From Botryllus schlosseri (taxonomy: Eukaryota): DNA of 64,000 nucleotides. Of the stretch, positions 1-56,169 are shown piece by piece; the stretch's first letter is position 1, and the number at the start of each line of letters is the position of its first letter. Location of the stretch: positions 5,890,001-5,954,000 of the forward strand of contig CM119386.1 in the NCBI GenBank assembly GCA_051294905.1, in the 5' to 3' direction. The position numbers and the translations under genes are program-made. Under the pieces are notes generated by a model. The model did no database searches. It saw only the letters and a program-made list of their open reading frames with translations, and had not been told where the DNA came from.

Positions 1-533
1 ATTTAATCCAACAATTACTATAGAATTTAGAATGTTTGTATTTACCATATTTGGTATTGACGTAGTACGCAGTGACGGAAGATTTTCTTCAGTACTCCCT
101 CTGTTCGGCTGGTGTTATCAATATGATGTGTTTGTTCTGCGCGAAGCTTCTCCGATGATGTCATATGCCCGTATAATTCGTCTTGTTATCTGTTTCACTC
201 GAGGTCCTGATAACATTTCATAACAAATGATTTGGTTAACGATGGGTTGTTCTAGGGATAAGATATTTGTTACTTTGTGGCATTTGTAATTTATGCGAGA
301 CCTTCATTTTTGGTTGCGTAAATTGACGACCAGTGCTGCAACTACTTGTGCGAACATAAATCGCTACATCGGTATTTCGACATTACCTTATTTAAGGAAT
401 CGTCTTCTCCATTCATAGTTCGTTACTGGTCCAATGGGCATGTTTTTTTCGCGTGCTCATATGTACGCAATTGTACCCGAAAACAGTTTATTCGCTGTAA
501 GATTCTTTTGTCGTAGTTTGGTCGTTATTACGA

Positions 534-673
534 TGTTGAGTGCATGGACTGTTGACTGTTGGATTTGCAGTGTCTGCATGATAACTACTTACAGAACGGA
601 ACGCTTTTGTAAGGTTTTCGTAAACTGAACATCTGCTTAGTGGATGTTTTGGGGCGTTCCTACAGTATTTGCA
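534..673 (-). mobile_element. Possible decayed BEL/Pao LTR-retrotransposon gag zinc-knuckle fragment
   Basis: CKYCRNAPKHPLSRCSVYENLTKAFR fits the Pao gag pattern C-x2-C-xn-H-x-L-x2-C-x2-[FY]-x2-L-x4-R. It is followed in another frame by CRHCKSNSQQSMHST. No LTR seen. Confidence 0.3.
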
Positions 674-1364
674 GGTCACTGCATTATCATATTCGGCTCA
701 AATATCACGCAGTCGCGTTCATTAATAAGCAATTCCTTGCCACAATTCCTCGTAATACAATCGCGAGTGGACTAATCACCCTAATCACATTCCGATTATT
801 CTGTATATACTCGTGTCGAAACCTGACCAGTAGTCCGTAGTCGAAATCTGATACCATCACGTTTGTAGCACCTTAAATGCGCTGACCGATGCGTACTGGG
901 TGCAAAGATGACACGGGAAGTTGCAACTGGTGAAATATTAGCTATGTTCTGGACGCTATCACAAGTCAGATCTTTATGTGGCTTGGAGTGTGCGGACCAG
1001 CTGTTGACGATACTCAGTCTCCAGTGGACGGCAATCAATTATCCTTATTTTTCGCAGTTACGAAGCTATTTTGTCGACTTAAGTTGCTCTACCCGTACAC
1101 CCGATTGTCGGTATGTCTTCCATTGTCTGATTCGGGGCCTACCATTTCGAGTAATCGTAATCTGACTCGTAAATCCTATCCCTTGCTTTTTCAATCACAA
1201 CCTATACTGCATGGGCTCAGCAGGTGAATTGGCCTGTACGGGTGGAACGTGGATAATGGCGTATAGAACAGAGATGGGTGAGCTGCCGCCCGTGACAGAA
1301 ATACTGTAGGGCCGCAAAAGCCTCACGCAACAATGTAAAAACGTCGATTTATTGGCGTGAAAAA

Positions 1365-1504
1365 TTCTAATTGTTACAATGTCAATCCAGTGTGACGCCA
1401 CAATTAAAGATTCGATGGCGTCATGGCTAAAAAACAGCAAAAAACAACAACAATAAACACATGTCTTAAAAAAGGGGCATGTTTTAAACATGCTTGTTTT
1501 AAAT
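1365..1504 (+). repeat. Partial copy of the MITE at 32601-33175
   Basis: Aligns by eye with 33013-33149 (caatgtcaatccaStgtgacgYca...aagattcg...gggcat...tttaaat) and ends in the TIR-like tgttttaaatg. Confidence 0.7.
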
Positions 1505-7500: not shown

Positions 7501-8399
7501 ACTATTCACCGAGCACCTAAACTCTCCACTGGATAGAGCACCAATGCACCTCTAGAATGCCAAAAAATGTATTTGAACATTAACTGATTAGTCCAGATTT
7601 TTGACTAGCATACATAACAAACTGCGCAGTACTCGCGTATACAAGCACTCGAGCTGCCGACTTTGGATTATTTCGTCAGGTAGTTATATCCCACATGTTG
7701 AATATATGTAGTTTTTTTGGCAAAAACCCTCCGAAGTGTAGGTTGATTCCATACAATTCCACGTGTTTCTTCGATTTTACACTGTCCAGCTGGTGGCAGC
7801 GTTATATAGATACACATAGTACATATCTATATATAAGTTCAGTGGTGCCAGAGAACAGTACGTCTGGCCAACACAGGTGAGTCATACTTGTCACTAAGTT
7901 GTCTCTGTTTATGTTTTGCCTGAATGACCATTGACTAATGACCATGGCATTTGGAGTAATGTGAACTGAACATCTGAGAAACATTATTGGTAGTATTAAA
8001 TATTATTGTACGTACATGTATACATATATAATAAGTCATGTATCCTCGTAGGAATAGTGGGAATGACGTAGGCAAAATATCGCAATATTTATTCTATTTT
8101 ACCTAAACATAGAATTCATTTGTTTTCGACCCCCAGGGTGTAGTGACTGTGTGTGATTATTCCTGATGTATCTTATATTTTGAGATATCATAATTCATAA
8201 CGTTGGACCGCAAAGCGCAAGGTGTGGTATCATGATTAGACTTATTGCGATCACTGTTACGGATATGGCACTTGGCATTCAATGCAACAAGCGACTTCAT
8301 CTTTCTGTGCTAGCAGAAAAGTATGTGAAAATGAGATTCATGGGAGCTTTCGCATTATTACAAGTAAAGATCGATGGATACAAATAGGACGAAATAGAC

Positions 8400-9587
8400 C
8401 AGTGGTTCTCAACCTTTTTCACCTCGCGGACCGGTAAAATTTCAAAAAATGTCTGGCGGACCGGTAAACTTTCAAAATTGAAATGAAGTCAAAGTGTAAA
8501 GTATGCAACCGTTTTTTGGAATCATATGATTTTAGAGAGTGACATTTGGAGGGTTTTTATCGTAATCATTATCTTCATGATGGCATCCATGTGATTTTGT
8601 GGTAGTCAGTCTGCTGGGTCGAGGTAAAATTGCCTTGTCCAGATAAACGTGCTACCGCCCAAAGTCGTTTACAGTCTTTCGCGCAGAAGGGCGTGGATTT
8701 AACCGAATATACGCCAACTCGAATAATATTCTTCTCTTCGACAATATCGAGAGAAGAAGCATTTCGGAGTCGAACCAGGCACCTTGCTCATTGCCCGCTG
8801 CCACCGGACGCATAGGCTACTATGGTGGGGTTACCATACGTCCTCTTCTAAGAGGATTTGTCCTGTTTTTTGACTTTTTTGAAAGTGTCCTCGGAGGACG
8901 CCCTTTTGTCCTCTTTTTTGAGATTTTGTCCTCTTATTTGAAAATTTCGGTCACATTTAGAGCAAAATGCGAGTGATATGCCGTAAATTAGCACAGAAGT
9001 GACGCTCCGGCGGGTATTTCGGATTGAAAAACGGTGATCTGAGCTCTGAGCGAAAAGTTGGCCTTTTTTTTTAGTCAACCGATCACAAAGTGGGAAAAAT
9101 TCACCGATTTTTGAGAATTATTATCCGGTTTTGCAAGTCTCAAATTTCTGAAAAAGTGTCCTCTTTTTAGATTTCCAAAATATGGTAAGCCTATATACTA
9201 TGGCAACTACGAATACATTGCGTGCCGCAATATAACACCTGCCCAGTTACGGTCCTGCACAAAATGAATGAATCGAAAACGAATGATCGCGCCAACTGCG
9301 GTGTTTAGCGATGATTCAGGTCGTATCTGTTCTGTACTTGTCGCTCGCATGTCGTCATATGTCACATCTTTAACTTTAAGTCAAATCGAGCATGTTTCCA
9401 GCCCTAATGTTACCTCGCGTAGTTCTGAATCAGTTTAAAATTTAATGTTTAATATATTTTATCGATGGAAAAGCCTTCAACTTTTCATCTGGAATTTAAG
9501 TTATAAAATTGTAAGATACCTCTCGGACCGGCAGGAAAGTCGTCGCGGACCGGCACCGGTCCGCGGACCAGCGGTTGAGAACCACTG
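8400..9587. mobile_element. Non-autonomous hAT (Charlie/Buster-type) element
   Basis: Perfect 15-bp TIRs CAGTGGTTCTCAACC / GGTTGAGAACCACTG. Perfect 8-bp TSD AAATAGAC (8392-8399, 9588-9595). Subterminal CGGACCGG repeats. Confidence 0.93.
8826..9193 (+). mobile_element. Blackjack-like hAT MITE, copy 1, nested in 8400-9587
   Basis: TIR-like ends TGGGGTTACCATA / TATGGTAAGCCTA. TACTATGG at 8818-8825 recurs at 9196-9203 (TSD offset by 2 nt). Repeated GTCCTC motifs. Clearly homologous to 28113-28439 and 36862-37214, also visible in the ORF track. Confidence 0.85.
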
Positions 9588-9845
9588 AAATAGACCACGA
9601 AGATGTCGTTACTTTCCTAGCGGCGAGCTTTTTCGGCTTCGTATGCTTTTCCCGGGATTCTTTATTGTGCGCGGTGTTCATGTGCTGGATTCTGCACTTC
9701 CCGCCAGACCGTTATAAATTGTGAAAAACAGCTACATTTTGTAGGGATAGACTGGTCTAATCCCGTAAGTCCCTTGCCATATTTTCACAAACGGTGTGAC
9801 ACGGTCACATACATGCAGTCTTTGCGGAAAGCCTTAAGTTGAAAT

Positions 9846-10247
9846 TGGTGCGGAGCGGCTCTCTGGTCTGACTCCGAGTCCGGATTTTAGAAATGACCGT
9901 GATCCGGTCCGAAAAAATCCGATAATAATCATCCACTCACAGGAGGGTATTGAATATTGATTGAAACAATGCAAACAGGACAGTAAAAACCCAAAGATCA
10001 AACCCAACCCTTATCTGAATTTATTATGCCAACTTGGTCTTATCATGTGGTTTATTTCCATGAACGTTTCTCTTTAATAATTGATTCGAGGGTGGAAGAG
10101 GGTAAGGATGTCACGCTATTAGTAAAAAGTACTGATCCGGCTCCGCTCCGACTCCGGCCATATCAGAAAAAATACTGACCCGGCTCCGGCCAAAATGAGA
10201 AAATCCGGCCGAATATCCAATCCGTCTCCGGTCCATGCTCCGCCCTA
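9846..10247. mobile_element. MITE with TCCGG/CTCCG subterminal repeats
   Basis: Imperfect TIRs TGGTGCGGAGC / GCTCCGCCCTA. Both ends are dense in actccg/atccgg motifs around an AT-rich core. Possible decayed TSD AGTTG(AAA/CAT). Confidence 0.6.
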
Positions 10248-10699
10248 AGTTGCATCGTAAATATAAGTGAGATGATAAACCTCGTAAGAAAAAGGGACAA
10301 ACATATATTCGATATTCGTGGTGTTATTCTATTAGTACGAATCGCATCCAATAAAGGAATTGACCGTTGACAATTGCACATTTCTTGGCCTTGGCACATG
10401 TCTTTCATGATATTATACAATGTTGTGTTCCAACCTTTGGCAATCTGTGGACTACCTTGAGATGGGAATTCACGTCTTGTTCCCCAGGTGCTATTGGGGC
10501 TAATAAAATAGACAACAAAACTTAGTTATGCCAGTGTGAGTGTATGTTCCACTTGCGCCTGGCAAGTGCGTTTTGAATGTCTCACCATAGATAATTCTGA
10601 TATCTACAAGGTGTTAACTTGCACCGCAAACCGCTAGTGTCCGTAACTGACGATGTCATTTAAACGACTATACACTTGTACAGAGTAATGCAAGAGTTT

Positions 10700-12780: not shown

Positions 12781-12806
<26 letters not shown>
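12781..12806 (+). repeat. (TG)13 microsatellite
   Basis: Read directly. Confidence 0.97.
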
Positions 12807-12811
<5 letters not shown>

Positions 12812-13072
12812 TTACAGCCTTTGATATCGCACTACAAATGCTCATAAATTCTTTCCGGACCGCAGCCGTTATCTCCAACTATGAAGTTTCAAAAGTAAAC
12901 CACCGGGAGTTCAAAATCCATCCGCACATTTGAATATAGTTGTTGCACGATGAAATGCATCACGTGGCGCCACATTAATACACCCCATTGACTAAGGTGA
13001 GACACGAGTCATATCTGCTGGGTGCGTGGCTCAAACCCTTGTTATTGTGATGTAACATCAAAGGAGACTGTG

Positions 13073-13229
13073 ACATCGGGCACTCGGTCGAGGTGGACAT
13101 CAACTGGTTGGTCGTTCGGCATCCCCCTATCTGTTCATTACATCGCATTGTGTGTCTTGTATATCGCATTGTACATTGTGTGTGTGTCTTGGGCAGATGA
13201 AAATATAATCTGACGATTGATTGATTGAT
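13073..13229 (+). repeat. Interspersed repeat with (GATT)n tail, copy 1 (SINE or LINE 3' end)
   Basis: Shares acatcgggca, ggtcgttcg, a 28-bp core tgtgtcttgtRtatcgcattgYacattg and a gattgattgat tail with 45999-46140. Confidence 0.7.
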
Positions 13230-16200
13230 CCATGGTTGCACCAGCATATATGTATTAAGTATTAGGTATGTATGTATACTAGTATACTATTAACCGGTCG
13301 AAAGAGAGAAAAAAATCGTAATGGTATCAAAGAACGATACATGTACATTGTACAAATGCAATTATAGATATGGAACAGAAGAAAACATTACTACCAGCCG
13401 AATATTACTATACTAAACCCTGAAAAGCTTACACAGATTTACCTCCAATAGTTTATTTGTTTTCATGTGAAAGAGTCTTCGAATTAAATGAATTATGCTG
13501 CAATAAACGTATGGCCTTGTAAACAATATTCAAGTTTTGTACCGCCAGTCAACTATTCAGGTTTTCATTACTGTAAATTCCCATTATTATACGCCGCATG
13601 TTTAGATTGCTCGGTTGTGGTGTTCGCCACGTGTAAGGAGTGATTCACGGCATTCAGAAATTTGAATGCAAAGTTTGCAGCTTTCACCTAGGCTAGATTG
13701 ATATCACCGGCCTTTCTCAATACCGCACCATACTGCAACGCTGATTACCCATAATACATTACCTGTCACCTTAATGACAGTAATTTGACTTAGCCATCGA
13801 AATCATTAGAATCGCATGATCATATGTGATGTCAATTGTCTTTGGTGCTATATCGCCAGTAGAACATTGTGTATACAACAACTGCCATTTGGTATCAATA
13901 ATATTGAGGTGAATATCACGTTGCCCTCCACATGATATGCGTGAGCTAAAATCCGACGGGCGTCGATTTGATTTTTGTTACGCGTTATTTGTCACTTGAT
14001 ATTTTAAAGAGCTTGATTTGTCAAGGGCTAACAAATATTGTTATGACAAAACTATTCTGTCATCTGTAGACATCACAGCTTTAATCGTTTGATTGCGCCA
14101 ATTACTGCATTATACGATAATCGTGACAGATTACACTTCGAATGCAATCGATTATGACCCATAAAACCACAATTACTATACTTCTGAGTCACTTTGACCA
14201 GATATTTGTCAAGTTCATCGAGTAATAAATATACGAGTTCGAATTAGTTTTGCCGAATTGAAAGCATTCTAATCCAAGATGGGGTGGGCCCAAACCTGAC
14301 AATATTGACTGACAATATCTTAGCTCGAAAACTACTAAAAAATTTTAAATCGTTGAATGGTCGTGTGGACATTGGTCCCTACACTGAAGACTGAAATATT
14401 TTCCAATGACCCGACCCCGAAATGCGGACTTACACCTCTGATTGGAAGCATACCCGGCCAGTTGTTGATTGTCAGAAAAATCATTTGGAATGTTTGTGAT
14501 TATGGAACCGATTATTTGACGATTTTTGCGTAATCGCAAATCAGTGTTCAAATAATATCTCCGCCCCTGTATATATGTAGCGCAAGCGTGTACTCACCAG
14601 CTACATACGAAGTTTACCGTGTCGTCACGACGCAGATAAAATCTACAAGATACCATCCGCGTTTATTATTCGCGGCTTGGTGTTCCCGGGCACATGCTTT
14701 TGATGTATTTTAAATTGTCGTGATCGCGCGGTCTGGGCTGAAAAACAGAATTATCTGAGAAACAAAACCAAATTGATTTGCTGACTGGATTTAACATGCT
14801 CCGCACAATAGATTGTTTATTGTTTCTATTTTTGAGTGAGATTGTGTCAACAAAAGAAATCCTCAATCCGCGGAACGAGGCGAGAAGTTTTTCGCGCTCG
14901 GGTGTCGATTGACAACGGCGATTGTGACGGAATCGTGTTTTTCTTCGAAATAGCTCTCTTTCTCTCAGATATTTTTTCCGCGTCCATTTTTTTCGCTCCT
15001 CGAATCTCGCCGCTGTCACCGCCACGAAAAGTATCGGCACTTGTCAGCCAGTAATCTCCTCCAGTATATCCGCTGGCTTATTGTCTCAATTACCTGGATT
15101 ATGGTATTTGTTCTCGGCATCGTTTACGAACCTGGTGCCTTAATCGGTTCAGAGCGCAAGTCTCCATATATTTTCGTGATAGAGTCGTCCTGAACTAGCG
15201 GAAGTTGAGCGTCTGGGCGGAAATACGACATTCGGACATAGGCATTCCCTTTTTACCTTGTTTAGGAGGCCCTTCTTTCTTAAAAGATCTTGTCTGTTCT
15301 GTCGGTTCGCGCAAAAGAAGGAACGCGTCTCAAATCTGACACATCACATACATTTATGGGAGTATTTTCAGAACATGGCATTGAAAATATCCACGGATCC
15401 ATCCATTTTGTGGTGTTATACCTTGTTACGTTTCCGTGTACTTTTCCACCATAAAGAAGAGAAAACCGCGGTGCGGGCGCGCTGATGTTATTTGTCGACT
15501 TACTTATAAAATTCCTTTCTTACGCAATAAATGTCTTCTTTTTGTCAGTCATATCGCTTATCGTTCTTACAACCTGAGTGCAACGGGATGTGTAGTAATC
15601 GCATTTGCGTTAGCTATAAGCACATCCACTACTATCTTACAGAGAGCTTCCGATAAAGAGAAATGAAATATACGCAAATATAAGTGTTAATTGGTCACGT
15701 CATCAACCCGAATACGTGATGCCGTTTGAAGTCCTATTGTCTTTGCTGAACAATTTGGCGATGCACTGAATGGTATCTGATGATATTAAGACCGGATATT
15801 ATAATAAGATTTATATAATAAATACATTTTATGGCTACCATATATGACGTTTTCTATCACTCAAACGACTTTATACTCAATTTGAGTCATGAATAGCCAT
15901 TAGAAGGATAAGTAGTTGGATATGCAGACTCGCCGCGCAGTCGTCTTCGCGCAAGCCAATTTCCACTTACCAAAATGCCTTCGATAATTCGATTCTAAAA
16001 TTTTCGTAATCGCCCGTGCATACTTCAGTGAAATCGTTTCCCGGCACAATTTCCAATCTGAATGTACAACACCTGTCAATCATCGGCGCGGAGCGATATG
16101 ATTCCCACATCAAAGATGTTTAGTAATCTTCACCACTCATGACAAGTCAGTCTGACTATCTTGTTACTGAATTATTTGCCTTACTCACCTATGACTTCTA

Positions 16201-19900: not shown

Positions 19901-22900
19901 CGCGCGAATTCTCGCAGTAATTACTGCCACCAATCGTCGACATTTGACATGACAATTGCGTTATCCAACGCAAGAGTGCTTGTAAAGATATCCCGTGGCC
20001 GCGTACTCACGGCCTGGTATTTTTCAATGATTTGAATATCGGCTCCGAACTGTCTGTGATGTTGATAACTGCGCTAATATCAGGGAGGCGATTGTAACTC
20101 ACTCGCTATCGGCGGAATTATCCGGGTTGGACCGCATTCAATAGTTTTTGCTCCAGCTGTCGCATAAGAATCTGCATCCAGATATAATAGTGTCGCGGCC
20201 TAGGTAGTATCGGGGCCTATGATACTGTAAGAAAGGCCACATGAAATTCCATCACGAATTCTTCACCGACATTGGTGTGCGTGCATAATACGCACACCAA
20301 GAATTATTTAACCACTGCATAACGGTGTCCTACCCCATACTATAAGCAGGTCGAACCGACAGCTGAACAGATTTTCACTACAATAAAAAGATCGTCCCTG
20401 TAGCTTCAGCTAACTACGGAATCATTCTATAACATTTCCAACGCGGCGACTAGCTCAAAAACTTCACCTCAAACGTGAGAGGTCTGGTAAAGAGTAGTTC
20501 AATCACGTTACTGTAGCTTGCCTAATACTATAAGATGGTAAAAACGGCAGCTCAAAACATCGCAGCCTACCTTCAACTCGAACACTCGCTTGCATAACGC
20601 CAATACCCCTGGTATAAGAAGCGAAAGCAAAACAATCGCCGATTGTCACGTCAAGAGGAATCGTCGAATCAAAAGGATCGCCTCTACAGTGTCAGGCGTA
20701 ATAGCGAATTTCTGTTTGTGAGCGTCGGCCTGTTAGCTCTTGCAAGTGTAATATGCCATTTATAGGGCCGTGAATATCGTAGGCCCCGGTAGTATTTATC
20801 TTCATATCGATCGACGTTAACACTTGTATATTGTATCGTATAGGGTGGATATTCTTCTCCACCATCTCGATATACATGAATGGCAACTTGTGTCTTCAAT
20901 CTGAGGGGGATTTGTCATATCGCAGTCAAATTTGGGATTGGCTGTTCAACTGCGGCACTTTTCGTTGATAATGAACTCTTACTTTTAAGAAGTAGGAAAG
21001 TACTGTTCCATTCGCGCTGTTCTTATAATCTACTTATTTTCCCAAGGATTGTTAGTACAAATTGTGAATTCTCGTGGCTTTTACCATTATTCCTTCGATA
21101 GATTTTGGAAGGAATCTATTGCGTGACCATTCTGTTTTACGAATCTTTCCCCGAAATCACATAAGCATTTGCATACATCAAAGGATTGGTATTCTGGAAG
21201 AGACTCTGTCCTTTTTTGAGTAATTAGTCTCAACATTGTTTTTCAACGATTTTATCAGCTCTCACACGTAGGCGCTCGGAGGATTAGTGCTGCGGCGAGA
21301 TACATTACCGTACGCTTTCGCTGTAAATGCCTGCATAAAAGAGTAACCAAGCAGTCATAATAAAGCGATTCAAATGATGTGCGACGACGCTTATCTTCTA
21401 ACTGATCGTGACCTTTTGACCGTCGCTGTTGTGCTACAATATAAGGAAAGCAAACTTCGCGTCATAATACACCTCGATGGAAACTGCGCTTTATTATTAG
21501 ATCTAGCAAGCAAACTTACAAACAACTTTGCTGCTATAATTGTGGAATTTGTTGTTGAGCAACTTCTGTTGCAAATAGAAACACAAATAAAACTTACAAC
21601 CATCCATTTAGAGAAGCAGCCTTACATCCAGTTTACAAAATCATTGCCAAGCGGGCGTTACCTGCATCAATACAGCCCCCAAATCTCAAGACCAAGAAGC
21701 CGTGTGATTGAGATAGCGATCGCTATCATTAATGTCACGCTATAGATCAGTATCTGCAGTTAACTGATCTGTAGTCACGCGAAGGGCAATTGGGCCAGTA
21801 GCATTGACCTACGCCCTTCGTGGTTTTTGCGTCGCACGACACTTTTGACATGTGTCTACTGGGTGAGATTGGCACTTGGCGAGATAACGTCACGTCCGCC
21901 GGCTTGATGACGCAAATGCGTGCGAGATTATCTTGAGGTCACAATGTGACTGGGGCTGATCAAAAGAAGTAATTCGATTGTGGTGTATCAAGAAGCATAA
22001 TGCAGTTTGGATTGTTGGTATGAATGTTACTTACTTACGCTGTGAAGTCTATTCCTTGTTCATCGCGCGAAGCATTATTCGATACTAAATGCTCAGGAGC
22101 GATGCTACTGTTCAAACATTATGCCACAGTATCATTGACGTAACTCCGTTTGCAATTTGAAAATTGACAACTCAAATTCTACTCGCAACAAGCGACAAGA
22201 TATACCTGCAGGAAAATGACACTGCATTAAAGTATTTCGTGATATCGTGCGCATTTTGGTGAAGGTCTCGTTACTCCTGTTAGAACTGCCAATGTGTGTC
22301 TCAATTTTGAAGAAAATTCGTAAAGTGACAAGCGCTTCGGCACCGGTATCGTCGTTGTTGTCGAGAGCTGCAAATTCTTCAGATACCGCGAAAAGCTACA
22401 CTTGAAGGGGTCTCGCCGCTCGGATTTTCGCCTGGAAATCGTACGGTCTGCACGCTAAATATCTCGGCCGAGACTTGCTCGACATAACAGGAAGCCCGCT
22501 AGGCTGATGATACTGGAATGGGGGAATATCCGCCAAATGAGTTTCGGTAATGGCTCTGCGGAAGAACCGCGCTCTGCCTTCCCGGATTTACTAACAACAC
22601 CACTGTTACACTCAAGTCAACAAATTAGCAGTTACAATACTGTAGTTGATCGTTACGTTTACAGTTGGGCATGCTACTCCCGTATTCTTTGATTGTCTTC
22701 GATTCTACGATCTGATGTTATGTATGCATTCTTCGGATGCCTGCAGACCGATGTTGTCTTTCAACAACAACGAAATGTGATACGGAATTTGATTTTATCA
22801 AACAACCCATACGGTCGCCAAACGATATAACGATATCCCCAAATTAAAATGTTGGAACCCGAGAACCATTCGTATCCAATGTGCGAGGGTGCATATTTCG

Positions 22901-37470: not shown

Positions 37471-39628
37471 ATTCGCCACAGATCTTGATTATTGGGTAGT
37501 GGGTACTCTTCCCCAAGAAAAAATACGCAAGATTTATAGAAATGGGCATATCACCGTTGGCCATGACCTCACCACAACGCACCAAGACGTATAAAGTTTT
37601 AGGCCATGTAACATGTGACTCCAAGAAGTGTGTCAGAGCGATCAGCAGCTGACCAAAAACTTCGAAATACCAAAAAATTCGTTATATATACCAAATACAT
37701 ATAGGTTTAATTGTCCATATAGGCGCCTGAATGACTGGCGTCGAATGTTTTTGTCTTGGCAATCTGAACCTCACAAGACAAATACCATCCCGCAGGAAAG
37801 AAAATTATATGCCAGTGAAGAAATACCAATCTGAAATCGTGTGATCTTTCAGTTTAGTAGGTTTGGGCAACTCTACATTTTTTGATATAGCAGACAGGAG
37901 GTCACGACATAACATCATGTAAAGAAGTCATACCTAGGGGTCCGCCCGCCCGAAAATGTTTAATTTTACGTGGTCTGCAGTTTCAAAGACACTTCTCACT
38001 CAGCTCCACCGGTAAATCTAATTACGTATGCAAAGAGGACAACCATGCAATTCCCGATCTTATTCACCGATTTTATCATGAATTATCGAAATATTCTCGC
38101 GTCGCATTGTCTCACTAAACAGTACAACTTTAATTTCGTGGCAAAAGCGAAAAACGTGATGCGGGGTCAGTTTATCACCATATGGGACTCTGGGATCCTG
38201 ACGAAGTGCTGTTACGTTCTTGCCAACGGGTATACCCCCGGAGATGTTTAATTACTATTGAGGGGGCCTATAACTTTTAAAACACACCTCACTCAGATCT
38301 ACCGGTCAATCAGTTTACGTGAAAAGAGACAGGATGAAAATTGATAGCAATACATGCAATTCCCGATCATATTGAACGATTCAGTCATGAAACTAAAGAA
38401 ATTCCTCGCGCTTCGCGCGTTTAGGCCAGGAAATCTGATTCACTCAACGGACACCCAATTCAGCAGATAAGTAGGCTAGCGGTAAACAGTGTACAGTTTT
38501 GAAGTCTCGTCAGGGCAATAAAACTACTCCGAAATAGCCACGATGACTGTTTGGGTCCGTTTCATAGCCGTAGTATTCGTGCGGCCCCGACCGTACTCGG
38601 AAATTCTAAATTTGGCCCTCACACCGAAGAAGTTTGGGAACCACTGGTGTAGACAATTACATATCTATTTCTACCCAATGAGATATCTGTCATCATGACA
38701 TAAGTGTCGGACCGTAGCCGCGGATTTCGGCGTAGGCCTACCCTGTCGCTTCGGTTAATCACGTCTGTTCACTGTTCAGTGTTCATTCGATGGCGCATTT
38801 AATATAGTGGTGGTATTAGTAGGGTTGTGCGAATATAGTTTCGGCTGATCACGCGATGCTTTCGCAGGGATAGTGAACTTGTCTTCATCGAAGTATATAT
38901 AATCCTTTTTCGGATACGGTGTATAGTTGATCACGAAGGGGGAAATTGTATAAGCACCCATGGTGTTCTTGTGTAATGTAATGCAGTTTATTTTCTTTGA
39001 TAAATGCTTCTCTGGGAATGACTCTTCACAAAGTTGCCTTGTCCGTAGACGCTCAGGAGAATTGATTTGTTATTATTGGCCCGTGACAACGATTGGTCTG
39101 TGATACAAATCGGTCTTTTCGGTGGCTTGTCTACGCCAAATGCTCCGATAGATGCTATCCCCGCTATGTCAAATCGTAACGGAACAAGATAGCGGTTAAA
39201 ACAGTTTCGTTTCCTTCTCGATCTAAGTTGCGCTGTACGCTTCGTGATAACTAGGGAGACTAATCATATCAAAATAAATAAACACGGTCCCTGATAGCGG
39301 CATTTAGTTGAGCGCAGTTTCGGACTCCACTAATTTTATATGATAGCAATCAAAAACGTAGTCCGGATACGTTGGATATACTACGTACTAATCATTAGCC
39401 CCTAACTAGCATCCTGTGTGCATTTCACATGGTGTCGACTCCATATTCCGACACTTTTCTTGTGAGATGTTATGCTGTGTATGCTACTCCAAATGAAGTG
39501 CATCGTAACCAGTAACCACGTTTGAGGGATTCCATAATGAACGGGGTGCATGTTATGTTTTGGGTGTTTTATTGAATGCAATGGACGTCTGGCAAGCATG
39601 CTGCTGTCATAACAACCAGGCTTTCAAT

Positions 39629-40182
39629 CAGGGTTGTAATGACTCGAGTCACGTTTTTCAGATGACTCGACTTGACTCGAGTCATTTTCTCAAAATACGG
39701 AAATGACTCGACTCGACTCGAGTCAATTTGTGTATTGACTCGACTTGGACTCGAGTCATTGCGCATGACTCGAACCAAGTCATATGACTCGAGACTGAGA
39801 CAGCCAAGAACGACGTTTCATTGTAATTTCGAGGAATAGTAAAGTAATCACACTACTGAGATTTCGTCTATTGGTACTGGTACTTGAAAACGCGTCCAGA
39901 AACTGCTAAAAATGACGAAAATTAGTATATTATAAATGCGAACCATTCGATATCACCAAACAGAGTTATAAAAAGTGGATTTAACAAGCCTTCTACTGGA
40001 AACTGGGCAGTCAGCACAATGACTTGGACTCGACTCGAGTCATAATACCATGACTCGGACTCGACCCTCTATTTGGTGACTTGGACTCGGACTTGACTCG
40101 GCGGTGAATTGAATATGACTCGACTTGACTCGAGTCAAAACTATAAAACTGAGATTGAATTGTGACTCGGAGCCTTGTGACT
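39629..40182. mobile_element. GACTCGAGTC-rich MITE, right end lost in the gap
   Basis: Begins CAGGGTTGTAATGACTCGAGTC. Six perfect GACTCGAGTC palindromes (39641, 39674, 39715, 39748, 40032, 40127) and many GACTCG hexamers lie in two arms around a unique spacer. Confidence 0.7.
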
Positions 40183-40318
40183 NNNNNNNNNNNNNNNNNN
40201 NNNNNNNNNNNNNNNNNNNNNNNNNNNNNNNNNNNNNNNNNNNNNNNNNNNNNNNNNNNNNNNNNNNNNNNNNNNNNNNNNNNNNNNNNNNNNNNNNNNN
40301 NNNNNNNNNNNNNNNNNN
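40183..40318. other. Assembly gap (136 N)
   Basis: Run of N. Confidence 1.
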
Positions 40319-43164
40319 ATAGCGTAGATATGCTGAAGTAGATACTAGATACTACCGATTTTAGGAGTCGGGGTCTTAACCTGCGGAAGTGTGCTTGGTT
40401 TTGGTTCACCGCTGCAGAACTGGGTTGGCGTTCCTACTTCTCATTGTTATTCTATATTTCGCCGGATGATATGAACGAACATAAAGATTTTCGGCCATGC
40501 CATTTCTTTTGCAAAAAAAGAAGATATATGTTGGAATTCGGTGTTCAGAGCACAGGATTTACCTTCCTGCCATTGGAAAACTGCTCGTAAAAACAAAACT
40601 CTTCATCATCACAGCTTGAAATGATCATCTCTCCAACCGCAGTATCTCATTTGCACCTAAATAGTGATGTATTGTTGTATAATGTCGCCCCGAAATAATA
40701 GTATCACATACAGTACGCGGCCTTCTCGGATTTCTGTTGTAAAAATTATCGTAAGATATACTTCAATACTCGAAATAGCCATCGAAACCACTCGCTCTGT
40801 TTTGTGTCTGCGTTCTTATCGAGTTACCTTCCCGCGATGGATAAGCGATTTGCATGTTAGCTCGGAGAACTGCCTTCAAAGGAAGCGGACTTTAACGACA
40901 CGATTCTCTCTCTAATATCAACTTGTCTACTTGATAGTAGCTCGCTTTTGTCTGAAAAGAATTATGAGTCAGGGCATGATTATCGCGACAACTACGCCTG
41001 AAACTGTTTTGATTTTGGAAGCCGCCCCGCTGATATCCATCTTGACATCTGTCCACAGCGATTCTCCTCGCTTCTGTAGTTGTAGAATGCCGCGAACATG
41101 GGCAATGGGCCGTCCGCACTTTGCGATAATGAGATTCCGGCGGTGCATGTCGACAATTAGGAAGATGGCATTTGATATGGGTAGATGACTAGATGTGTGT
41201 TGGTTTCGCAAAGGATGGGATGGAATAAAATGCATTCCATCCGTTGTGTGACATTCGGCAAGCTCTGATTGATTTTAGGTATGGCGATTCACTCCATTTC
41301 GGAAAATAATGAAGGAAATATACGCCCAGTACAGTTGGCTGGTTAGGAGTGATGTCCTACCCACGTTACTTGGCCCTGGCATTATCCTGGTGAGGCTTTG
41401 TTGAGATTACCAACAAAATAAAAAAGCGTAATAAGCCTACCATACATTTGATATAGCGCGTTGGAGTGCCTATACATGTGATGGTTGCATAATGCATATG
41501 CATCTTGACCTCTTGTGGGCACGGACAGGTGACATCTTGATTTGGGTGGAAATGAGGGAACACATATATTGTGAGGCATTCTATGATGTAGTGACCTGAC
41601 ATAGGAATTCGTATTTATTATCGATGCTGAAGACTTCGCGCGAACCTTGCCCATTTGTTTTGGGGTTGAAAACAGGGGAAATGAGACGGATGCTTATTGC
41701 TAGTCTAGAAACGATCGAATGAAATCCCCTGATTAACATCCAGATCTGAGAATAGGAACGATCCCAAACAGAGTCCAAATAATGTTGGTGCGAGCTTACA
41801 AAGCTCGCAAGTCTCGAACAATTTACATCAAGGTGATCGTGTTTGAGATGAGACTAAAAAATGCTTCTTTTATGATCACTTGGCCAAATAAGTAACTTGC
41901 CACCAAATTTACATTTTGTCCGGTTTACCTTTTGCTAAGTTTTATCACCCGCTAGTTTAATGCGAAGGGGTGTTTCATGTGATATTTGTAATGCAAATCG
42001 CGGTTTCTAAAAAGATTCCGTTTTTTTAATTCTACACATTGCACCCAGTATCATATTTTCCAATTTGTTTCGTCAATAAGTAAATCATATTTTAATGTAT
42101 GCCGAAACAGTGAAAGTTCAGAATGTTTAAAGTCTAAATTTAGTATTTTCGCACGTATAAGATTCTATGGCGATATGAATCGAGATAACATTTATCATCG
42201 TATTCAGAAATAGGTGATAATTTTAACTTTGTATTGTTCTAAGCCAGGCGGAAAATCCGATAAAAACGCATCATATAAAAAGTTCTCGAACTATCACCAA
42301 TTTTGAAATCGTCACCGTTATCATCCGACTCTAACCAATCAAAAATAACGCACAGCAACCCATCGGTGCTGTCATTACTCGAGACCTTGCCGTATAGATG
42401 TCAAAGTTTATTGCGAAATTAAAGTGACCAATAGCAACCGCGTCTATTTGAGCTGGAAGTGGGCGGTGCTTTATTGGCACCAATCGTCTACAGGATCAGT
42501 TTGACCGGAGTGATCGGGTATGCGGGCATGCGCGCGGTTGGTAGAGATATTTCCATATCGATGGCCAGGCTCATTGAAGATCCAGACATTGCGTCCTTTA
42601 TTGCACCTTCTTTGGTATTACCGAATCGTTGTAGCAGTCGAATACAGTGCGGTAAACGCGCCAAGTGGATTCAAGCACTCTCGGCCGCAGATTGGTACGT
42701 GCGCGCACAATCCGATACCAAAAATATAACATTCTAATGCCGCCTATTGTTACTATCTGAGTAATGCGACGTTGATGGATGGCCAGTCTCGCGATACACC
42801 TGAACTCGGATGAGTGGTTCGCCGCAAACTGCATTTCGCCGAACACTCGGCGATTGCCAGTCTTTAAGCGAAATCAATCAAGGATTGGAAAAGTTGTTAT
42901 GAGTATTATTCAGATTGAATTTGATAATAGTCAATCCCTGTGGCATTCAACATCGCATAGTTTGTGACCATGGTTGTATCCTGGGAAGCGAAAATGATCC
43001 CTCCCCCTGATTTTACTTTGAAATTGTGACTCTGTCCGTTTTACTGCGTCACAATTCAGCCGTGACGTCGTTAATTTGTCAACGCGTGTTCGCCCACCCT
43101 TACATTTTCAATTGCTTCTCGCAAATTTTCATCCTGGCAATGACTAACTTTGTGACCTTCCATT

Positions 43165-43408
43165 ATGGCTTCTTAACCAGGGGTCCGTGAACCCTTTTGG
43201 GGTACGAAGCAGAAAATCAGGGGGTACGAGATATATTGTGGATTTAGGCATACACGCTATCTAGACTTCAAAATTAATGGGCAAACCAACAAAAAGTTGG
43301 ATATTTTGTTGACGGATTTATTCAACTCAACAATTTTCTTCGCGCTACGCGCGAATTCATGTTGATGGTCTTTTTGATTTGAGCGGTAAAAAGGTTAAAG
43401 AAACAGTG
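43165..43408. mobile_element. Degenerate hAT (Charlie-like) MITE
   Basis: Decayed TIRs (atggcttcttaacc / ggttaaagaaacagtg), GGGGTACG subterminal repeats and the TTCGCGCTACGCGCG motif; no TSD. Confidence 0.5.
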
Positions 43409-45598: not shown

Positions 45599-45618
45599 CT
45601 CTCTCTCTCTCTCTCTCT
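45599..45618 (+). repeat. (CT)10 microsatellite
   Basis: Read directly. Confidence 0.95.
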
Positions 45619-45998
45619 CCCCTGCACTGAAAGCTCTAATTTTGCATTAACCTGGAGCCTGTATGATCCGCCTAGTAGTAACGGGGATATAACAATTTCA
45701 CTTTCACGGATTTAAAAATATGGTTCATTTGGTAAATTCACCGCCATCGGCTCGAGATCCCCCCAGTTCGAGCCTGGGCAGTGGCAGGCTTCGAAGTGTC
45801 AAAGTATATCTCGGTTCCCCTCCTCTGGGTCGCTCTTCTGACGGCGTCCAAACAAAAAAAGTCCATACAAAGTCCATGCAGGGCCTACTATATTACTATA
45901 TAGTAGGCCATGGTTCATGTGAAGAACAAATGAAAAAAATACAACGAAATTAATCAAGTTAAATAAGACGGCCGGAAGATCCAAGATCAAACAATTTT

Positions 45999-46140
45999 AC
46001 ATCGGGCATTAGGCAGAGCGGTATGTTAGATTGAGAGACCGCTCTCGGTCGTTCGATATCGAGCTGTGTCTTGTGTATCGCATTGCACATTGCGTCTCTC
46101 TAGCGGATAAAGAAAATAATAGAAGCGCTGATTGATTGAT
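45999..46140 (+). repeat. Interspersed repeat with (GATT)n tail, copy 2
   Basis: Homologous to 13073-13229. Confidence 0.7.
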
Positions 46141-52100: not shown

Positions 52101-52510
52101 CACAGAATATATATAGGTTCTGGTAGTAAATTGTCCCTTGCAATTTTATTTATTAGTACCAGCATTGTATAAGCCTCGTTTACAGTGCATAAAATGCCCT
52201 CTTTAAAACTTCTCACGTGGTTGATATGTGTGACGCAACCGTATAGAGGACATTGCGATTAAAATATACGTTTATTGTCACCCTGCTTATAATCATTGGT
52301 GTTGTTTATTTGTGGTATTCATGGTGTTTTTCGACTACAATGGTCATTTACACGGGCCCTATATTCTTTTTCATGATTCCGTATCTACTGACTAGGCTTT
52401 CTAAGACACCGCTAACGCTTACATGCCGAATAGGAGCCAGGATCAACCTCCAACGCCTGGGAAGGAATTCTGGAATCGATATAACCCTCAGCGTTACAGA
52501 ATCATAATGT

Positions 52511-52788
52511 GGCGAGATAACGTAGTGGTTTAATCAACAGCTGCAACACCAATGAGTTATGGGTACGAGTCCGAGTCCGACCGAGGTCGATTCCAGAATT
52601 CCTACCTAAGTGTTGCAGGTTATATCAAGGCTCCTCCTCGCCTTCTCATCCGTGTAAGCGGTGTCTTATAAAACCTAGAAGTGTGCCTTGCTACAAGTCG
52701 GCAGCTACAGAATAACATCGATGAAAGTTGGTCTGGTGTAAATGACTATAGTAGTCGACAACAACAACAACAACAGAATAATAATAAT
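52511..52788 (+). mobile_element. tRNA-derived SINE-like element
   Basis: A box TAACGTAGTGG (52518-52528), B box GGTACGAGTCC (52562-52572), a non-tRNA body and a (CAA)n/(TAA)n tail. Confidence 0.55.
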
Positions 52789-55700
52789 CAGTATGTGTTG
52801 TGGTGACTAATTACGCTGGTAAATATAGATATTGACCTTAGTTATGAATTTATGCCCGGGTGTTTTTGTACATTGTACAATGTACATGGTGGGCGTGTAG
52901 TGTGGTTGACTTTTTGGGTGACCTTTCAGAATAGATGCTACAGCTACACATATTTCGGGCTTTACAATCCAAAATCCCCTCTTCAGCCGGTGCATTATTA
53001 TTCCACACGACTGCGGATAGCGAGAAATCACGAAACGATGCGGCAAACCCAATCTAGGTTACGTTTGCCAAGTTGGATTGTTCGCAGTCCGCTCCGTCTC
53101 AATATAGAAAATTCCCTTTTCCCTTCATTGTGACAAGACTTCCGCTCGGGAAAAATTATCTCCGATTCAATCAAAGCAGAATATCAACTCGCGATGTGAG
53201 CAATTTGGAAGAAGCGCGGAGCGGCGGCGTTTGTCTAATGCGGTTTGACGCCTTGCCACCTGCCACTCCCTTCGTTGATATCGCGATTGTAAGCCGACCT
53301 ATCCTCGAAACTTCTTCAGTCGTCTGCTGTTTGCGATGCGGCCTTAAAAACAGCAATACAAATCTACTATATGTCGTGGCATTCCGAAGTTGTTATTGCT
53401 GTTGTATCTCGATAATCAATCGAATTTCTGCGACAAGTGTTTGTCGCAAATTCTCCATTTCCCAGGCTGTCGCGGTTGGCGATTGTTCCGATGCGACGGG
53501 ACCTTGTAGGCGTAAATATTACACGGAAGTCTCAAAAGTCTAAATTATGTTAGCATTGGTTTCTGATCATTACCAATCTTATAGATTATCAATAGAAAAA
53601 ATAACAAATAGTATCCGACTTTGCATAACCGAAATCGATACGTTGAGAAGAAATCTACGTGAGATAAGGACTTTACCGACACTTCATTTCTCATATCATA
53701 TCGCTAATGATGTAGTAGTGATACCGGCTTGGACAATGCATTACAATGTTTTTATGGATCTCGACACGCCTACTATGTGTGTCCGAATAAGTGCAGTGTA
53801 GCCAGAAATGGGAGCGTGGCATATTTTCCAACACTTCAATTGAGTTTCAAATTGACGTAACAGTGACACAACGAACCTGCTAACAAATATACTATTACAT
53901 ATCTTACACGTCAATTAATTACACGCAACGGACATACACAAAGTTGCATGGTGGGTATTTGCAGTATATAAAATTCAAATAAGTTAGTTTTCATTGTTGA
54001 GGCATACCCATGCCCAAGTGGAGTGATGCTATAGTTGACCGGTTCTTTTGTCCGATAAAATCCATCCTTGTTATTTGTCAACTACGATTACTGCATGACG
54101 GATGAAATGTATACTTGTTCTGAAAAGTACATAGGCGTCGAAAGCATGCTACTCATTTTGTACTATTAGTTTTTGGTGGTAGTATCACATCACAAAATTG
54201 CATTCCTTCATCTCATTCCACTATCAACATTGATCAATTGCGGCTTATATTTGTACAATCTACCGCGCGACCGATACTTGATCTATTCCGGCAGAATTTT
54301 CTTAACCTTCTATCACCATAAGCAAACTAGTAAACCGTTCTGTATTGGATATTTTCGTCTGTTTATCTCTGCACGCATTGGACTTGCAGCTTTCTCACTG
54401 CCGGAGAAGCATCGTAATTTCCCGTCGCTTGGGCGTCTAAGTTGACACGACTCAGAGCGCGTGACTCATTTATCGGATTCCGCGAAAGCGGGTCGTGCTC
54501 GAATGTGTCAAGTTTAAATCCTACTCGGAATCGCGGCGCGTGCCGAGTCGCATGTGTTGGATTCGGGATAAGGAAGACTGTATTTGTTTACCGGAGTAGG
54601 CCTACGGAGTGCATATTATCACCAGCGTTGTAACAAGTTTGCATACATGAGTTTTTATGCTGGACGTCCGTGTGTTGCGAGCTAAGCGAACTAAGGGGTC
54701 GCTGATGCTAACTCGGGATATCGAAATTTGTCTCTACGTTAATTGTGACATCTTTTCCCCGCTACTCTCTAATTGTCTGTCGATCATCCACTTTCTTGAA
54801 ACTTACGATATTTTACCTCGACGGCATTGTGTCCGTGGTTTGGTACATTGCAACGCCAATTTTCCGTGCGAATTGGTATTTTTGTTTGCAATTTCACGCT
54901 CGCAACGGATCTGTGTATTCCGCATCCACCAGTATGATTGTCATGTACCAATACCGAGTTGTTTACACTAAAACCAAGCATTCGACGTAATTTCAAAATT
55001 CCGCGCCGTGACGACAGGCCGTCTTTTCCGCGAAATCTCGGTTGTACGCTGCGCGTGAGCCGTTACAAGACTGACCCTGTGTATATGCGATGATGCTGAG
55101 ATAATCCAAATAACGGTCGCGTAACATAAGAAGCCGCTGTGATTGCGATCAATTACTGATGGTTTGTGACAGTTTACCGAATATCGGCGATTCTATCGGC
55201 GGGTATGACTGAACCGCATATTAAATGTAATTGCCGGGATTTTCAGGAGTCAAGCCATCGCTCTGCACGAAAGCAAATGCATTCGAAGGGGCCTTTTTTC
55301 GTCAGATTTGCGTTTGCTGTGTGATACAAACGTACTGAATATAACTAGTGATGAAAGTTTTGTTTTTATAACCAGATTTCTCTGACCAATATTACTCGTC
55401 GTGTGCTTCACCGTATTTTATAACTCGCTGTTAGCAGTCTATTTCAATATTTATGTATTAATCAACTGTTGGTTGTTTTCTGTGTCAAACTACAAATATA
55501 TTTCTATCGCACATCGATACATTGTAGGACTGATAAAGAAACCGTAAAATTGAATACTTGACGGGAGCCTATGTTGCTGTTCTTTGATATTCACGGTGTT
55601 TCTACAATCTACATCTTGGTCATTTCACACCGGGCCGACAAGGTGATTTATGATTTTTTCTTTTCCGTCTCATATTACGGACAACTACCGTTGTAGGATC

Positions 55701-56169
55701 GCATTGAGATGGGAGGGGTTATACGTAATACGTACTTCACAAGTCAGGCGTGGTATATCCACATCCATATGGGTCTCCGATACATGTACTCAGAGTGATG
55801 TATGCAACACGCAGCATTTGTTTTTTACTTGTTGAAATGTCACCACGACAATAAATAGCGTAGGAACGCTATTTGTCAACTATGTGGTGGCGTGAATCAT
55901 GGAAATGGCCGCTAATTCGCTGATTATTGCCGGGATTTGTTCGGCTTTGGACACGTTCCGATCGAAGTTTATGTTTTGTTGTCATGTTTTGCAATAGAAT
56001 TGAAATCAGTTCATTCTTTGTTATTTTGAAGATACGCCGTAAGAAAAGGCTTCTTTTCTTACGTCGAATCCGTGTTTCAAACCCGCGTTTTCATTTTAAT
56101 CAACAAAATATGTGAGAAATAACTATAAGCTGAAGCATGGTAGACTTATTCAATATTATTTTATTCCAG

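What the first reader, a model, noticed from the sequence alone, without database searches (positions are those of the whole stretch)
1..56169. Giant last WWOX intron retained: candidate Maf genomic regulatory block
Seen: the terminal exon starts in phase 0 at RQGA, and no convincing upstream WWOX exon lies in 56 kb, while the neighbouring Maf introns are only 275-496 nt. Established: human intron 8 sits before QQGAATT, is roughly 0.8 Mb and overlaps FRA16D. Inference: this particular intron has stayed about 100-fold longer than its neighbours because it houses enhancers acting on Maf across the WWOX 3' end. It would be a small, tractable model of the vertebrate WWOX/MAF domain.
Basis: partly seen in the sequence, partly recalled or inferred. 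Interest (0 to 1): 0.8.

Follow-up and report, generated by a model that had tools for sequence, protein, structure and literature searches.

The report
80-kb last WWOX intron beside Maf
The last intron of this animal's WWOX gene is real, 80 kb long and free of genes, and it lies next to the Maf gene as in humans, so it may hold Maf's control elements, but that role is untested.

Summary
The terminal WWOX exon starts at window 56170, in phase 0 (RQGA...). The previous exon lies 24 kb before the window. The intron runs C16:5865906-5946169, 80,264 bp, GT..AG. Six raw RNA-seq reads join the two exons directly. No WWOX exon lies in 1-56169. The other WWOX introns measure about 0.1-12.5 kb, and the Maf introns are 275 and 496 nt.

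The intron shows no coding signal. Its open-frame spectrum matches random sequence, and there are no real Pfam, Rfam or tRNA hits. At least 8.5% of the window's part is short interspersed repeats. The assembly gap abuts a young high-copy repeat and touches no reading frame.

A related species carries Maf and the last WWOX exon tail-to-tail on one 7.4-kb contig.

Of the published genomic-regulatory-block criteria, two are met: a developmental gene beside a bystander, and a large bystander intron. Conserved linkage is also met. The two decisive criteria, conserved non-coding elements and enhancers acting on Maf, could not be tested here. WWOX is already described as a MAF bystander in vertebrates, so this would be a new member of a known kind. 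The scan also noted the same gene pair separately (s1-306298).

The parts
1..56169 (+). The 3' 70% of the last WWOX intron. The whole intron is C16:5865906-5946169, 80,264 bp, GT..AG.
   Evidence: Exon mapping. RNA-seq reads join the flanking exons. No ORF excess over random sequence. No real Pfam, Rfam or tRNA hits.
40183..40318 (.). Assembly gap of 136 N, length estimated, inside the intron.
   Evidence: The left flank is a high-copy young repeat. No frame crosses the gap. It was not filled.
39627..40182 (.). Young high-copy interspersed repeat with clustered TGACTCGAGTCA palindromes, running into the gap.
   Evidence: At least 40 scored copies at 93-97% identity. The palindrome occurs 6 times against 0.1 expected. 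Repeat structure.
8395..9594 (.). Composite interspersed repeat. The core, 8828-9193, is a roughly 366-bp high-copy element.
   Evidence: At least 39 scored copies, mostly 94-96% identical, from 10,443 first-look candidates. Diverged copies at 28127-28442 and 36857-37213.
9861..10261 (.). Interspersed repeat of about 390 bp.
   Evidence: Copies at 85-88% identity.
13053..13233 (.). Interspersed repeat of about 180 bp.
   Evidence: At least 39 copies at 82-96% identity.
20224..20791 (.). Interspersed repeat of about 560 bp.
   Evidence: Copies at 78-89% identity.
43157..43380 (.). Older interspersed repeat of about 220 bp.
   Evidence: Copies at 74-83% identity.
52296..52792 (.). Inverted dimer of a roughly 250-bp interspersed repeat.
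   Evidence: Matches on both strands at 52296-52479 and 52504-52792. No Rfam hammerhead hit here.
56170..56361 (+). Terminal coding exon of WWOX: 63 codons plus the stop, phase 0.
   Evidence: RNA coverage and the splice junction.
56362..56620 (+). WWOX 3'UTR, with AATAAA at 56598-56603.
   Evidence: RNA contigs end at 56533 and 56599, and read depth stops in the 56485-56681 bin. Sequence.
56621..60351 (.). Spacer between the convergent 3' ends. It contains a transcribed high-copy repeat cluster at 57273-58454.
   Evidence: Depth table and contig pieces.
60352..61361 (-). Maf exon 3: coding part 61361 down to the stop at 61170-61172, then the 3'UTR.
   Evidence: Two RNA contigs cover 60352/60354-61363. 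Translation and boundaries.
61362..61857 (-). Maf intron 2, 496 nt.
   Evidence: The junction appears as a loose end that decodes to ENEKTNLQR.
61858..61990 (-). Maf exon 2, the basic region of the bZIP domain.
   Evidence: Pfam bZIP_Maf, E=4.6e-14. Boundaries.
61991..62265 (-). Maf intron 1, 275 nt.
62266..63206 (-). Coding part of Maf exon 1, from the ATG at 63206.
   Evidence: 81% identical to P0151 of a related species.

Best explanation
What is shown. Window 1-56169 is the larger part of one genuine 80,264-bp terminal intron of the WWOX orthologue. An earlier scan note, which I did not verify, says the genome is a sea squirt's. The intron occupies what appears to be the conserved position of the giant vertebrate intron 8, before [R/Q]QGA. 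It is removed in one piece from the mRNA. It carries no detectable coding gene and no known RNA gene. It consists of sequence not shown to be repeated, sprinkled with short interspersed repeats. WWOX ends about 3.7 kb from the 3' end of a convergent large-Maf gene.

What is inferred. The intron most likely belongs to the cis-regulatory territory of Maf. It would hold enhancers that loop to the Maf promoter about 7-87 kb away. WWOX would be a bystander gene that cannot be separated from Maf or lose this intron without misregulating Maf. That is a genomic regulatory block, as already proposed for vertebrate MAF/WWOX.
For: Structure.
- Exon map.
- Six RNA-seq reads joining C16:5865905 to window 56170.
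- The other WWOX introns are about 0.1-2.2 kb plus one of 12.5 kb. The Maf introns are 275 and 496 nt.

Non-coding content.
- The ORF-length spectrum equals that of Markov-random sequence: 379 against 373+/-14 ORFs of 60 aa or more, and a longest ORF of 185 against 187+/-21.
- 49 ORFs of 100 aa or more give only two marginal DUF hits.
- No Rfam hit at gathering score or at E<=0.01 in the window, none at gathering score in the upstream 24 kb, and no tRNA in the window.

Gene identities.
- bZIP_Maf at E=4.6e-14, plus WW and adh_short matches on the WWOX exons.

Conserved linkage.
- One 7,444-bp contig of a relative carries Maf exon 1 (81% identical), two further Maf-strand ORFs at the places of Maf exons 2 and 3, and the last WWOX exon (74% identical), tail-to-tail.

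Local geometry.
- The nearest gene on Maf's 5' side, a polycystin-like gene, starts within about 16 kb. The WWOX intron is therefore the largest non-coding territory near Maf.

Literature.
- WWOX is named a bystander in the vertebrate MAF regulatory block (PMC2745767).
- Bystander genes characteristically carry very long introns, and conserved pairs in tunicates are enriched in developmental-plus-bystander pairs (PMC3514665).
- Human intron 8 is about 800 kb.

Weak support.
- CpG observed/expected is 1.03-1.36 across the intron and Maf, against 0.86-0.95 over the WWOX 5' exon cluster.
Against: - No conserved non-coding element, open-chromatin site, contact or enhancer activity was shown. Criteria 3 and 4 for a regulatory block are untested.
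- One 8.9-kb intron stretch shares fewer 31-letter words with another individual and with a sister taxon (0.36 and 0.18) than the exon/UTR stretch does (0.53 and 0.49). On average the intron evolves fast. That does not exclude short conserved islands, but it gives them no support.
- No Maf recognition elements are present.
- The repeat share of 8.5% is only a lower bound. Each genome search showed only the top families among thousands of candidates, so a larger transposon contribution is possible.
- The genome has other long introns according to unchecked scan notes.
- WWOX has a second large intron of 12.5 kb that is not next to Maf.
Confidence: 0.5

Rival explanations
1. Neutral bloat. The intron is long because short transposons and other junk accumulated in a tolerant site. 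WWOX and Maf are neighbours only because no rearrangement has yet separated them. The match with the human giant intron is a coincidence.
For: At least a dozen short interspersed repeat copies were found, some young at 93-97% identity. Thousands of first-look candidates were left unscored, so the repeat share may be much above 8.5%. The sampled intron stretch diverges faster than the exon/UTR stretch.
Against: With nine introns, the chance that the largest one falls at the same position as in humans is about 1 in 9. Tail-to-tail linkage is also kept in a relative and in vertebrates. If the sea-squirt identification holds, that persistence is more striking, because tunicate gene order is known (from the literature, my recollection) to be heavily rearranged. 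No large transposon ORFs or remnants were seen. Within the window, self-similarity is low.
Confidence: 0.22
2. The intron serves WWOX itself. It might hold WWOX's own enhancers or alternative promoters or exons, or its length might act as a transcription-time delay. Maf would be irrelevant.
For: Intronic enhancers of the host gene are common. Low RNA-contig coverage is seen in the last 700 nt of the intron in one run (X3).
Against: WWOX is an oxidoreductase. I recall it as broadly expressed, but that was not checked here. Such genes seldom need 80 kb of control DNA. All six junction reads join the penultimate exon directly to the last one. No extra WWOX-like exon lies in the intron. The coverage in X3 may be pre-mRNA or DNA carry-over.
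Confidence: 0.1
3. The intron hosts an unannotated transcription unit, such as a long non-coding RNA, a multi-exon gene with short exons or a new small RNA. That unit would fix the intron's size.
For: RNA coverage was laid on only 670 nt of the intron. Short exons would escape an ORF-length test. A run guessed to be RNA holds 0.10 of the words of 43400-52280 (X3).
Against: No ORF excess, no real Pfam hit and no Rfam hit even at E<=0.01. The 0.10 share may be repeats or DNA carry-over.
Confidence: 0.1
4. Assembly artefact. The two exons are really much closer, and the 80 kb results from a misjoin around the gap at 40183-40318.
For: There is a gap of estimated size inside a high-copy repeat.
Against: Both exons lie in the right order and orientation on one 22.6-Mb scaffold. 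Each side of the gap is tens of kb of sequence with little self-similarity. Contigs of the source sample hold 0.98 of the words of 43400-52280. A misjoin would have to insert DNA on both sides.
Confidence: 0.03

Closest known systems
Vertebrate MAF genomic regulatory block with WWOX as bystander (Synorth, Genome Biol 2009, PMC2745767)
   Same: The same two genes sit next to each other. I recall that they are convergent in human as here, but that was not checked. The non-coding bulk lies in the same last WWOX intron. The target is a developmental bZIP factor and the bystander an oxidoreductase.
   Different: Here the intron is 80 kb rather than about 800 kb. The spacer between the two 3' ends is under 4 kb; I recall a large gene-poor interval in human, which was not checked here. 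Conserved non-coding elements are documented in vertebrates but were not examined here. The lineage, reportedly a tunicate, is one in which the searchable literature does not report this block.
Ancient bystander/target pairs such as Islet-Scaper and Otx-Ehbp1 (Irimia et al. 2012, PMC3514665)
   Same: A developmental regulator is linked to an unrelated gene with an expanded intron, and the linkage persists over long evolutionary distances. The paper reports that such pairs are enriched in tunicates.
   Different: For those pairs, enhancers in bystander introns were shown by 3C and transgenics. Here nothing functional is shown. Whether WWOX-Maf is in that paper's list could not be checked, because its supplements are not held.
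Human WWOX intron 8 / fragile site FRA16D
   Same: Apparently the same intron position, before [Q/R]QGA(A/S)TT, and the largest intron of the gene in both.
   Different: Fragility is a property of very large, late-replicating human genes. An 80-kb intron gives no reason to expect it, and nothing was tested.

Membership tests
Genomic regulatory block (criteria of Irimia et al. 2012, PMC3514665 section 8) | A developmental transcription-factor gene next to a functionally unrelated bystander gene | tested here: met
   Maf: bZIP_Maf at E=4.6e-14 with a 313-aa N-terminal exon. WWOX: WW x2 and adh_short exons. The two are convergent, with 3' ends about 3.7 kb apart.
Genomic regulatory block (criteria of Irimia et al. 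2012, PMC3514665 section 8) | [quoted passage not shown] | tested here: met
   The last intron is 80,264 bp and a second one is 12.5 kb. The others are 2.2 kb or less.
Genomic regulatory block (criteria of Irimia et al. 2012, PMC3514665 section 8) | Linkage of the two genes conserved across lineages | tested here: met
   One 7.4-kb contig of a relative holds both genes tail-to-tail. Linkage in vertebrates comes from the literature. Only one invertebrate relative could be examined.
Genomic regulatory block (criteria of Irimia et al. 2012, PMC3514665 section 8) | Short highly conserved non-coding elements in the bystander intron | not testable with these tools
A metagenome scan found nothing. 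Coarse word shares give no support either way.
Genomic regulatory block (criteria of Irimia et al. 2012, PMC3514665 section 8) | Enhancers in the bystander intron that act on the target gene's promoter | not testable with these tools
   This needs ATAC/ChIP, 4C or Micro-C, and reporter assays.
WWOX orthologue | Two N-terminal WW domains followed by a short-chain dehydrogenase domain, as a single orthologous locus | tested here: met
   Ten exons are collinear with P0016 residues 7-404. P0016 itself carries Pfam WW and adh_short. Other genomic matches are at most 34% identical SDR paralogues.
WWOX orthologue | Cofactor-binding motif TGxxxGxG | tested here: met
   Exon 4 reads ...VAIVTGGNSGLG.
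WWOX orthologue | Catalytic YxxxK motif of the dehydrogenase domain | tested here: not met
   Exon 8 reads IQHNRTKLCN, where P0016 has IAYNDSKLCN and P0018 has VQYNRTKLCN. No alternative exon with Tyr lies between the flanking exons. Not checked in reads, so a strain variant or an assembly error is not excluded.
Large Maf transcription factor | Maf-type extended homology region, basic region and leucine zipper, preceded by a long N-terminal region | tested here: met
   ...ELISISVRDLNRRLRGM | [28 protein letters not shown].... bZIP_Maf hit. Exon 1 has no Pfam hit of its own.

The most novel reading that the evidence does not exclude
The WWOX-last-intron/Maf arrangement is an ancient chordate regulatory block, possibly older. 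Under this reading, the intron that became the 0.8-Mb, FRA16D-bearing intron 8 in humans was already the enhancer-bearing part of Maf's landscape before tunicates and vertebrates split. Selection has held it in place and kept it long in a lineage that scrambled most gene order. This 80-kb version would be a tenfold smaller, electroporation-ready model of the human WWOX/MAF domain.
Probability: 0.4. Interest if true: 0.6.

Novelty: new member of a known kind. Interest (0 to 1): 0.45.

Why it matters
The human WWOX/MAF region spans more than a megabase. I recall it as carrying cancer deletions and disease-association signals, and the papers read here place fragile site FRA16D in intron 8 and report lipid-trait associations there. 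It is hard to tell which gene a given non-coding variant acts on. If the same bystander-target logic operates in an 80-kb intron of an animal whose embryos take reporter DNA easily, the enhancers could be mapped piece by piece. One could then test directly whether WWOX's odd gene structure exists for Maf's sake. It would also add a clear case to the argument that regulatory constraint, not chance, preserves some gene neighbourhoods in highly rearranged genomes. If the intron proves to be neutral filler, the finding is just a correctly described long intron.

Tried and rejected
1. Maf recognition elements (TGCTGASTCAGCA and TGCTGACGTCAGCA, up to 2 mismatches): none, with 0.7 and 0.3 expected. 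No sign of autoregulation.
2. Known RNA genes: Rfam at gathering score over the whole intron and at E<=0.01 in the window, plus tRNA in the window. Nothing.
3. Nested coding genes or transposon ORFs: the ORF spectrum equals random sequence. A Pfam scan of 49 ORFs gave only two marginal DUF hits, taken as chance.
4. Cross-species comparison:
   - The only close relative's contig is listed without DNA.
   - P0016 is a transcript and P0003 sits on a 736-bp contig.
   - The Maf exon 1 protein search found one relative only.
   - The metagenome scan found none.
5. Complete repeat map: own-genome DNA searches score only about 39 candidates each, so every query showed just its one or two most abundant families. 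The 8.5% figure is a lower bound.
The CpG contrast therefore has only a small, biased baseline.
8. Literature: no paper in the library mentions WWOX-Maf linkage outside vertebrates. The supplements of Irimia 2012 are not held.


Full report
**1. What is at the coordinates**

The window is G000:C16:5890001-5954000 of a 495.5-Mb assembly. An earlier follow-up note of this scan (s1-240481) calls the genome a sea squirt's. I did not verify the taxon.

At 56170 an exon opens after ...ttattccag. It reads [31 protein letters not shown]...VYD* to the stop at 56359-56361. A scan of 1.84 billion protein representatives with these 63 residues gave 506 hits. One was a full-length 415-aa protein, P0016. 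P0016 carries Pfam WW and adh_short domains, so it is a WWOX orthologue.

**2. Where the rest of WWOX is**

I searched the whole genome with P0016 and ran tblastn on 144 kb of fetched sequence around the window. Together these give ten collinear exons on C16, numbered here as C16 minus 5,840,000:

| Exon | Position | Content |
|---|---|---|
| 1 | 5387-5461 | first WW domain |
| 2 | 6265-6339 | |
| 3 | 6449-6508 | second WW domain |
| 4 | 7278-7472 | includes TGGNSGLG |
| 5 | 9699-9809 | |
| 6 | 10091-10201 | |
| 7 | 22694-22876 | |
| 8 | about 24742-24819 | |
| 9 | about 25760-25905 | |
| 10 | 106170-106361 | terminal exon, window 56170-56361 |

The penultimate exon ends ...RPFTKSL|gtagga. The last intron is therefore C16:5865906-5946169, which is 80,264 bp with GT..AG ends. 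The window contains its last 56,169 nt. No credible WWOX match lies inside window 1-56169. Judged from the tblastn match ends, the other introns measure about 0.8, 0.1, 0.8, 2.2, 0.3, 12.5, 1.9 and 0.9 kb.

**3. RNA evidence**

I laid two raw RNA-seq runs and two sets of run contigs on window 55500-61400.

- In run X23, six reads that begin at different places reach 56169/56170. They continue upstream with CTTCCTCGTCAGACCATTCACCAAAAGCCT. This is the end of the penultimate exon 80 kb away, with two single-base strain differences.
- The mRNA therefore joins these two exons directly.
- RNA contigs and read depth put the WWOX 3' end near 56600-56620, and AATAAA lies at 56598-56603.
- Two contigs cover 60352/60354-61363, which is the last Maf exon with its 3'UTR. 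Their loose end decodes to ENEKTNLQR, the end of Maf exon 2.

**4. Maf**

On the minus strand the coding exons are 63206-62266, 61990-61858 and 61361 down to the stop at 61170. The introns are exactly 275 and 496 nt. Exon 2 matches Pfam bZIP_Maf at E=4.6e-14.

WWOX and Maf are convergent. Their RNA 3' ends lie about 3.7 kb apart. The spacer holds a transcribed high-copy repeat cluster at 57273-58454.

On Maf's 5' side the next gene is polycystin-like, with GPS and PKD_channel matches. It starts within about 16 kb. The WWOX intron is thus the largest non-coding territory near Maf.

**5. The gap**

The gap at 40183-40318 is intronic and no reading frame crosses it. Its left flank, from about 39627, is a young interspersed repeat. 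At least 40 scored copies are 93-97% identical. The repeat is studded with TGACTCGAGTCA palindromes, 6 against 0.1 expected. That probably explains why assembly broke there. The intron length includes its estimated 136 letters.

**6. What the intron contains**

- **Coding signal:** the number and length of stop-free frames match second-order Markov simulations. There are 379 frames of 60 aa or more against 373+/-14, and 50 of 100 aa or more against 50+/-6. The longest is 185 aa against 187+/-21.
- **Protein families:** a Pfam scan of 49 frames of 100 aa or more gave only two marginal DUF hits.
- **RNA genes:** Rfam gave nothing at gathering score over the whole intron. It also gave nothing at E<=0.01 in the window. 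There is no tRNA in the window.
- **Self-similarity:** low within the window.
- **Repeats:** own-genome DNA searches revealed short interspersed repeats of 180-1200 bp at about a dozen places, 4.8 kb or 8.5% of the window's part. Each search scores only about 39 of thousands of candidates, so this is a lower bound.
- **CpG:** observed/expected is 1.03-1.36 through the intron, Maf and its flanks. It is 0.86-0.95 over the WWOX 5' exon cluster and 0.75-1.0 at eight of nine loci from other chromosomes. This fits a germline-unmethylated domain of the kind seen around developmental genes.

**7. Conservation**

- **Linkage in a relative:** the only close relative in the protein collections has one 7,444-bp contig. 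It carries Maf exon 1 (P0151, 81% identical), two further Maf-strand ORFs and the last WWOX exon (P0001, 74% identical) on the opposite strand. The gap between the last Maf-strand ORF and the WWOX exon ORF is about 1.5 kb. The convergent pair is therefore conserved.
- **Intron position:** genomic ORF fragments from many other animals start their similarity exactly at ...FQ|QQGAATT. The intron position therefore appears widely conserved.
- **Coarse divergence:** another individual holds 0.36 of the 31-letter words of intron stretch 43400-52280, and a sister taxon holds 0.18. For the stretch 56100-57100 with the exon and UTR the shares are 0.53 and 0.49. On average the intron diverges faster. 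This says nothing about short conserved islands.

**8. Interpretation**

The literature names WWOX as a bystander in the vertebrate MAF regulatory block (PMC2745767). It gives four predictions for such blocks (PMC3514665).

- Prediction 1, a developmental gene beside an unrelated gene, is met here.
- Prediction 2, a very long bystander intron, is met here. Conserved linkage is also met.
- Prediction 3, conserved non-coding elements, could not be tested.
- Prediction 4, enhancers acting on the target, could not be tested.

That the same one of nine introns is the giant one in both human (about 800 kb) and this animal argues against pure chance. So does persistent adjacency to Maf. It is circumstantial all the same. 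I put the regulatory-block reading at about 0.5. The rivals are neutral bloat at about 0.2, WWOX's own regulation or an unannotated transcript at about 0.1 each, and assembly error at about 0.03.

**9. Novelty**

The kind is known and the vertebrate case is published. I found no report of the WWOX-Maf pair or of this intron outside vertebrates. The supplementary pair list of Irimia et al. 2012 could not be read. I therefore file this as a new member of a known kind, of moderate interest.

Unchecked scan notes flag similar intron expansions at Islet-Scaper and Otx-Ehbp1 in this same genome. The scan had also noted this same gene pair separately (s1-306298).

Noticed in passing
L015:4742-4819 (C16:5864742-5864819, WWOX exon 8, outside the window): The catalytic Tyr of the dehydrogenase YxxxK motif reads His (IQHNRTKLCN). 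Two other WWOX proteins, P0016 and P0018, have Tyr there. No alternative exon with Tyr lies nearby. It could be a real loss of the canonical catalytic residue, a strain variant or an assembly error.
   Followed up: partly
window 39627-40182: A young high-copy interspersed repeat (at least 40 copies, 93-97% identical) with clustered TGACTCGAGTCA palindromes runs straight into the assembly gap. It looks like the subterminal-repeat region of a DNA transposon.
   Followed up: partly
window 57273-58454: A repeat cluster in the WWOX-Maf spacer has very high summed depth in RNA-run contigs (up to about 6,600) and many odd joints. It appears to be a transcribed high-copy element family.
   Followed up: no
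window 52296-52792: Two copies of a roughly 250-bp interspersed repeat sit as an inverted dimer. Another reader flagged hammerhead repeats in inverted dimers in this genome, but Rfam finds no hammerhead here even at E<=0.01.
   Followed up: partly
window 8395-9594: A 1.2-kb composite repeat. Its 366-bp core (8828-9193) has very many copies at 94-96% identity, with 10,443 first-look candidates for the 20-kb query. Older copies lie at 28127-28442 and 36857-37213.
   Followed up: partly
L001-L005, L007 (C7:10.82-10.85 Mb): A tandem cluster of at least six intronless short-chain dehydrogenase genes, 33-34% identical to the WWOX enzyme domain.
   Followed up: no
L019:5263-5742 and L020:5912-6241 (16-27 kb beyond the window's end, minus strand): A polycystin-like gene (PKD_channel and GPS motif matches) is Maf's neighbour on its 5' side.
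   Followed up: partly
window 60352-61363: RNA runs differ from the assembly at roughly one base in 45 in the Maf 3'UTR and last exon. The species seems highly polymorphic, which would allow population-based tests of constraint.
   Followed up: no
C16:5844001-5856000 versus the window: CpG observed/expected dips to 0.86-0.95 over the WWOX 5' exon cluster but stays at 1.03-1.36 through the last intron and Maf. This may mark a boundary between a methylated gene body and an unmethylated domain.
   Followed up: partly
window 44345-44523: An 84-bp unit is duplicated in tandem (2.1 copies, 98% identical).
   Followed up: no
C8:1758882-1759154: A second locus encodes a complete bZIP_Maf domain in one exon (96 bits), so Maf at this locus is not the only Maf-type gene in the genome.
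   Followed up: no
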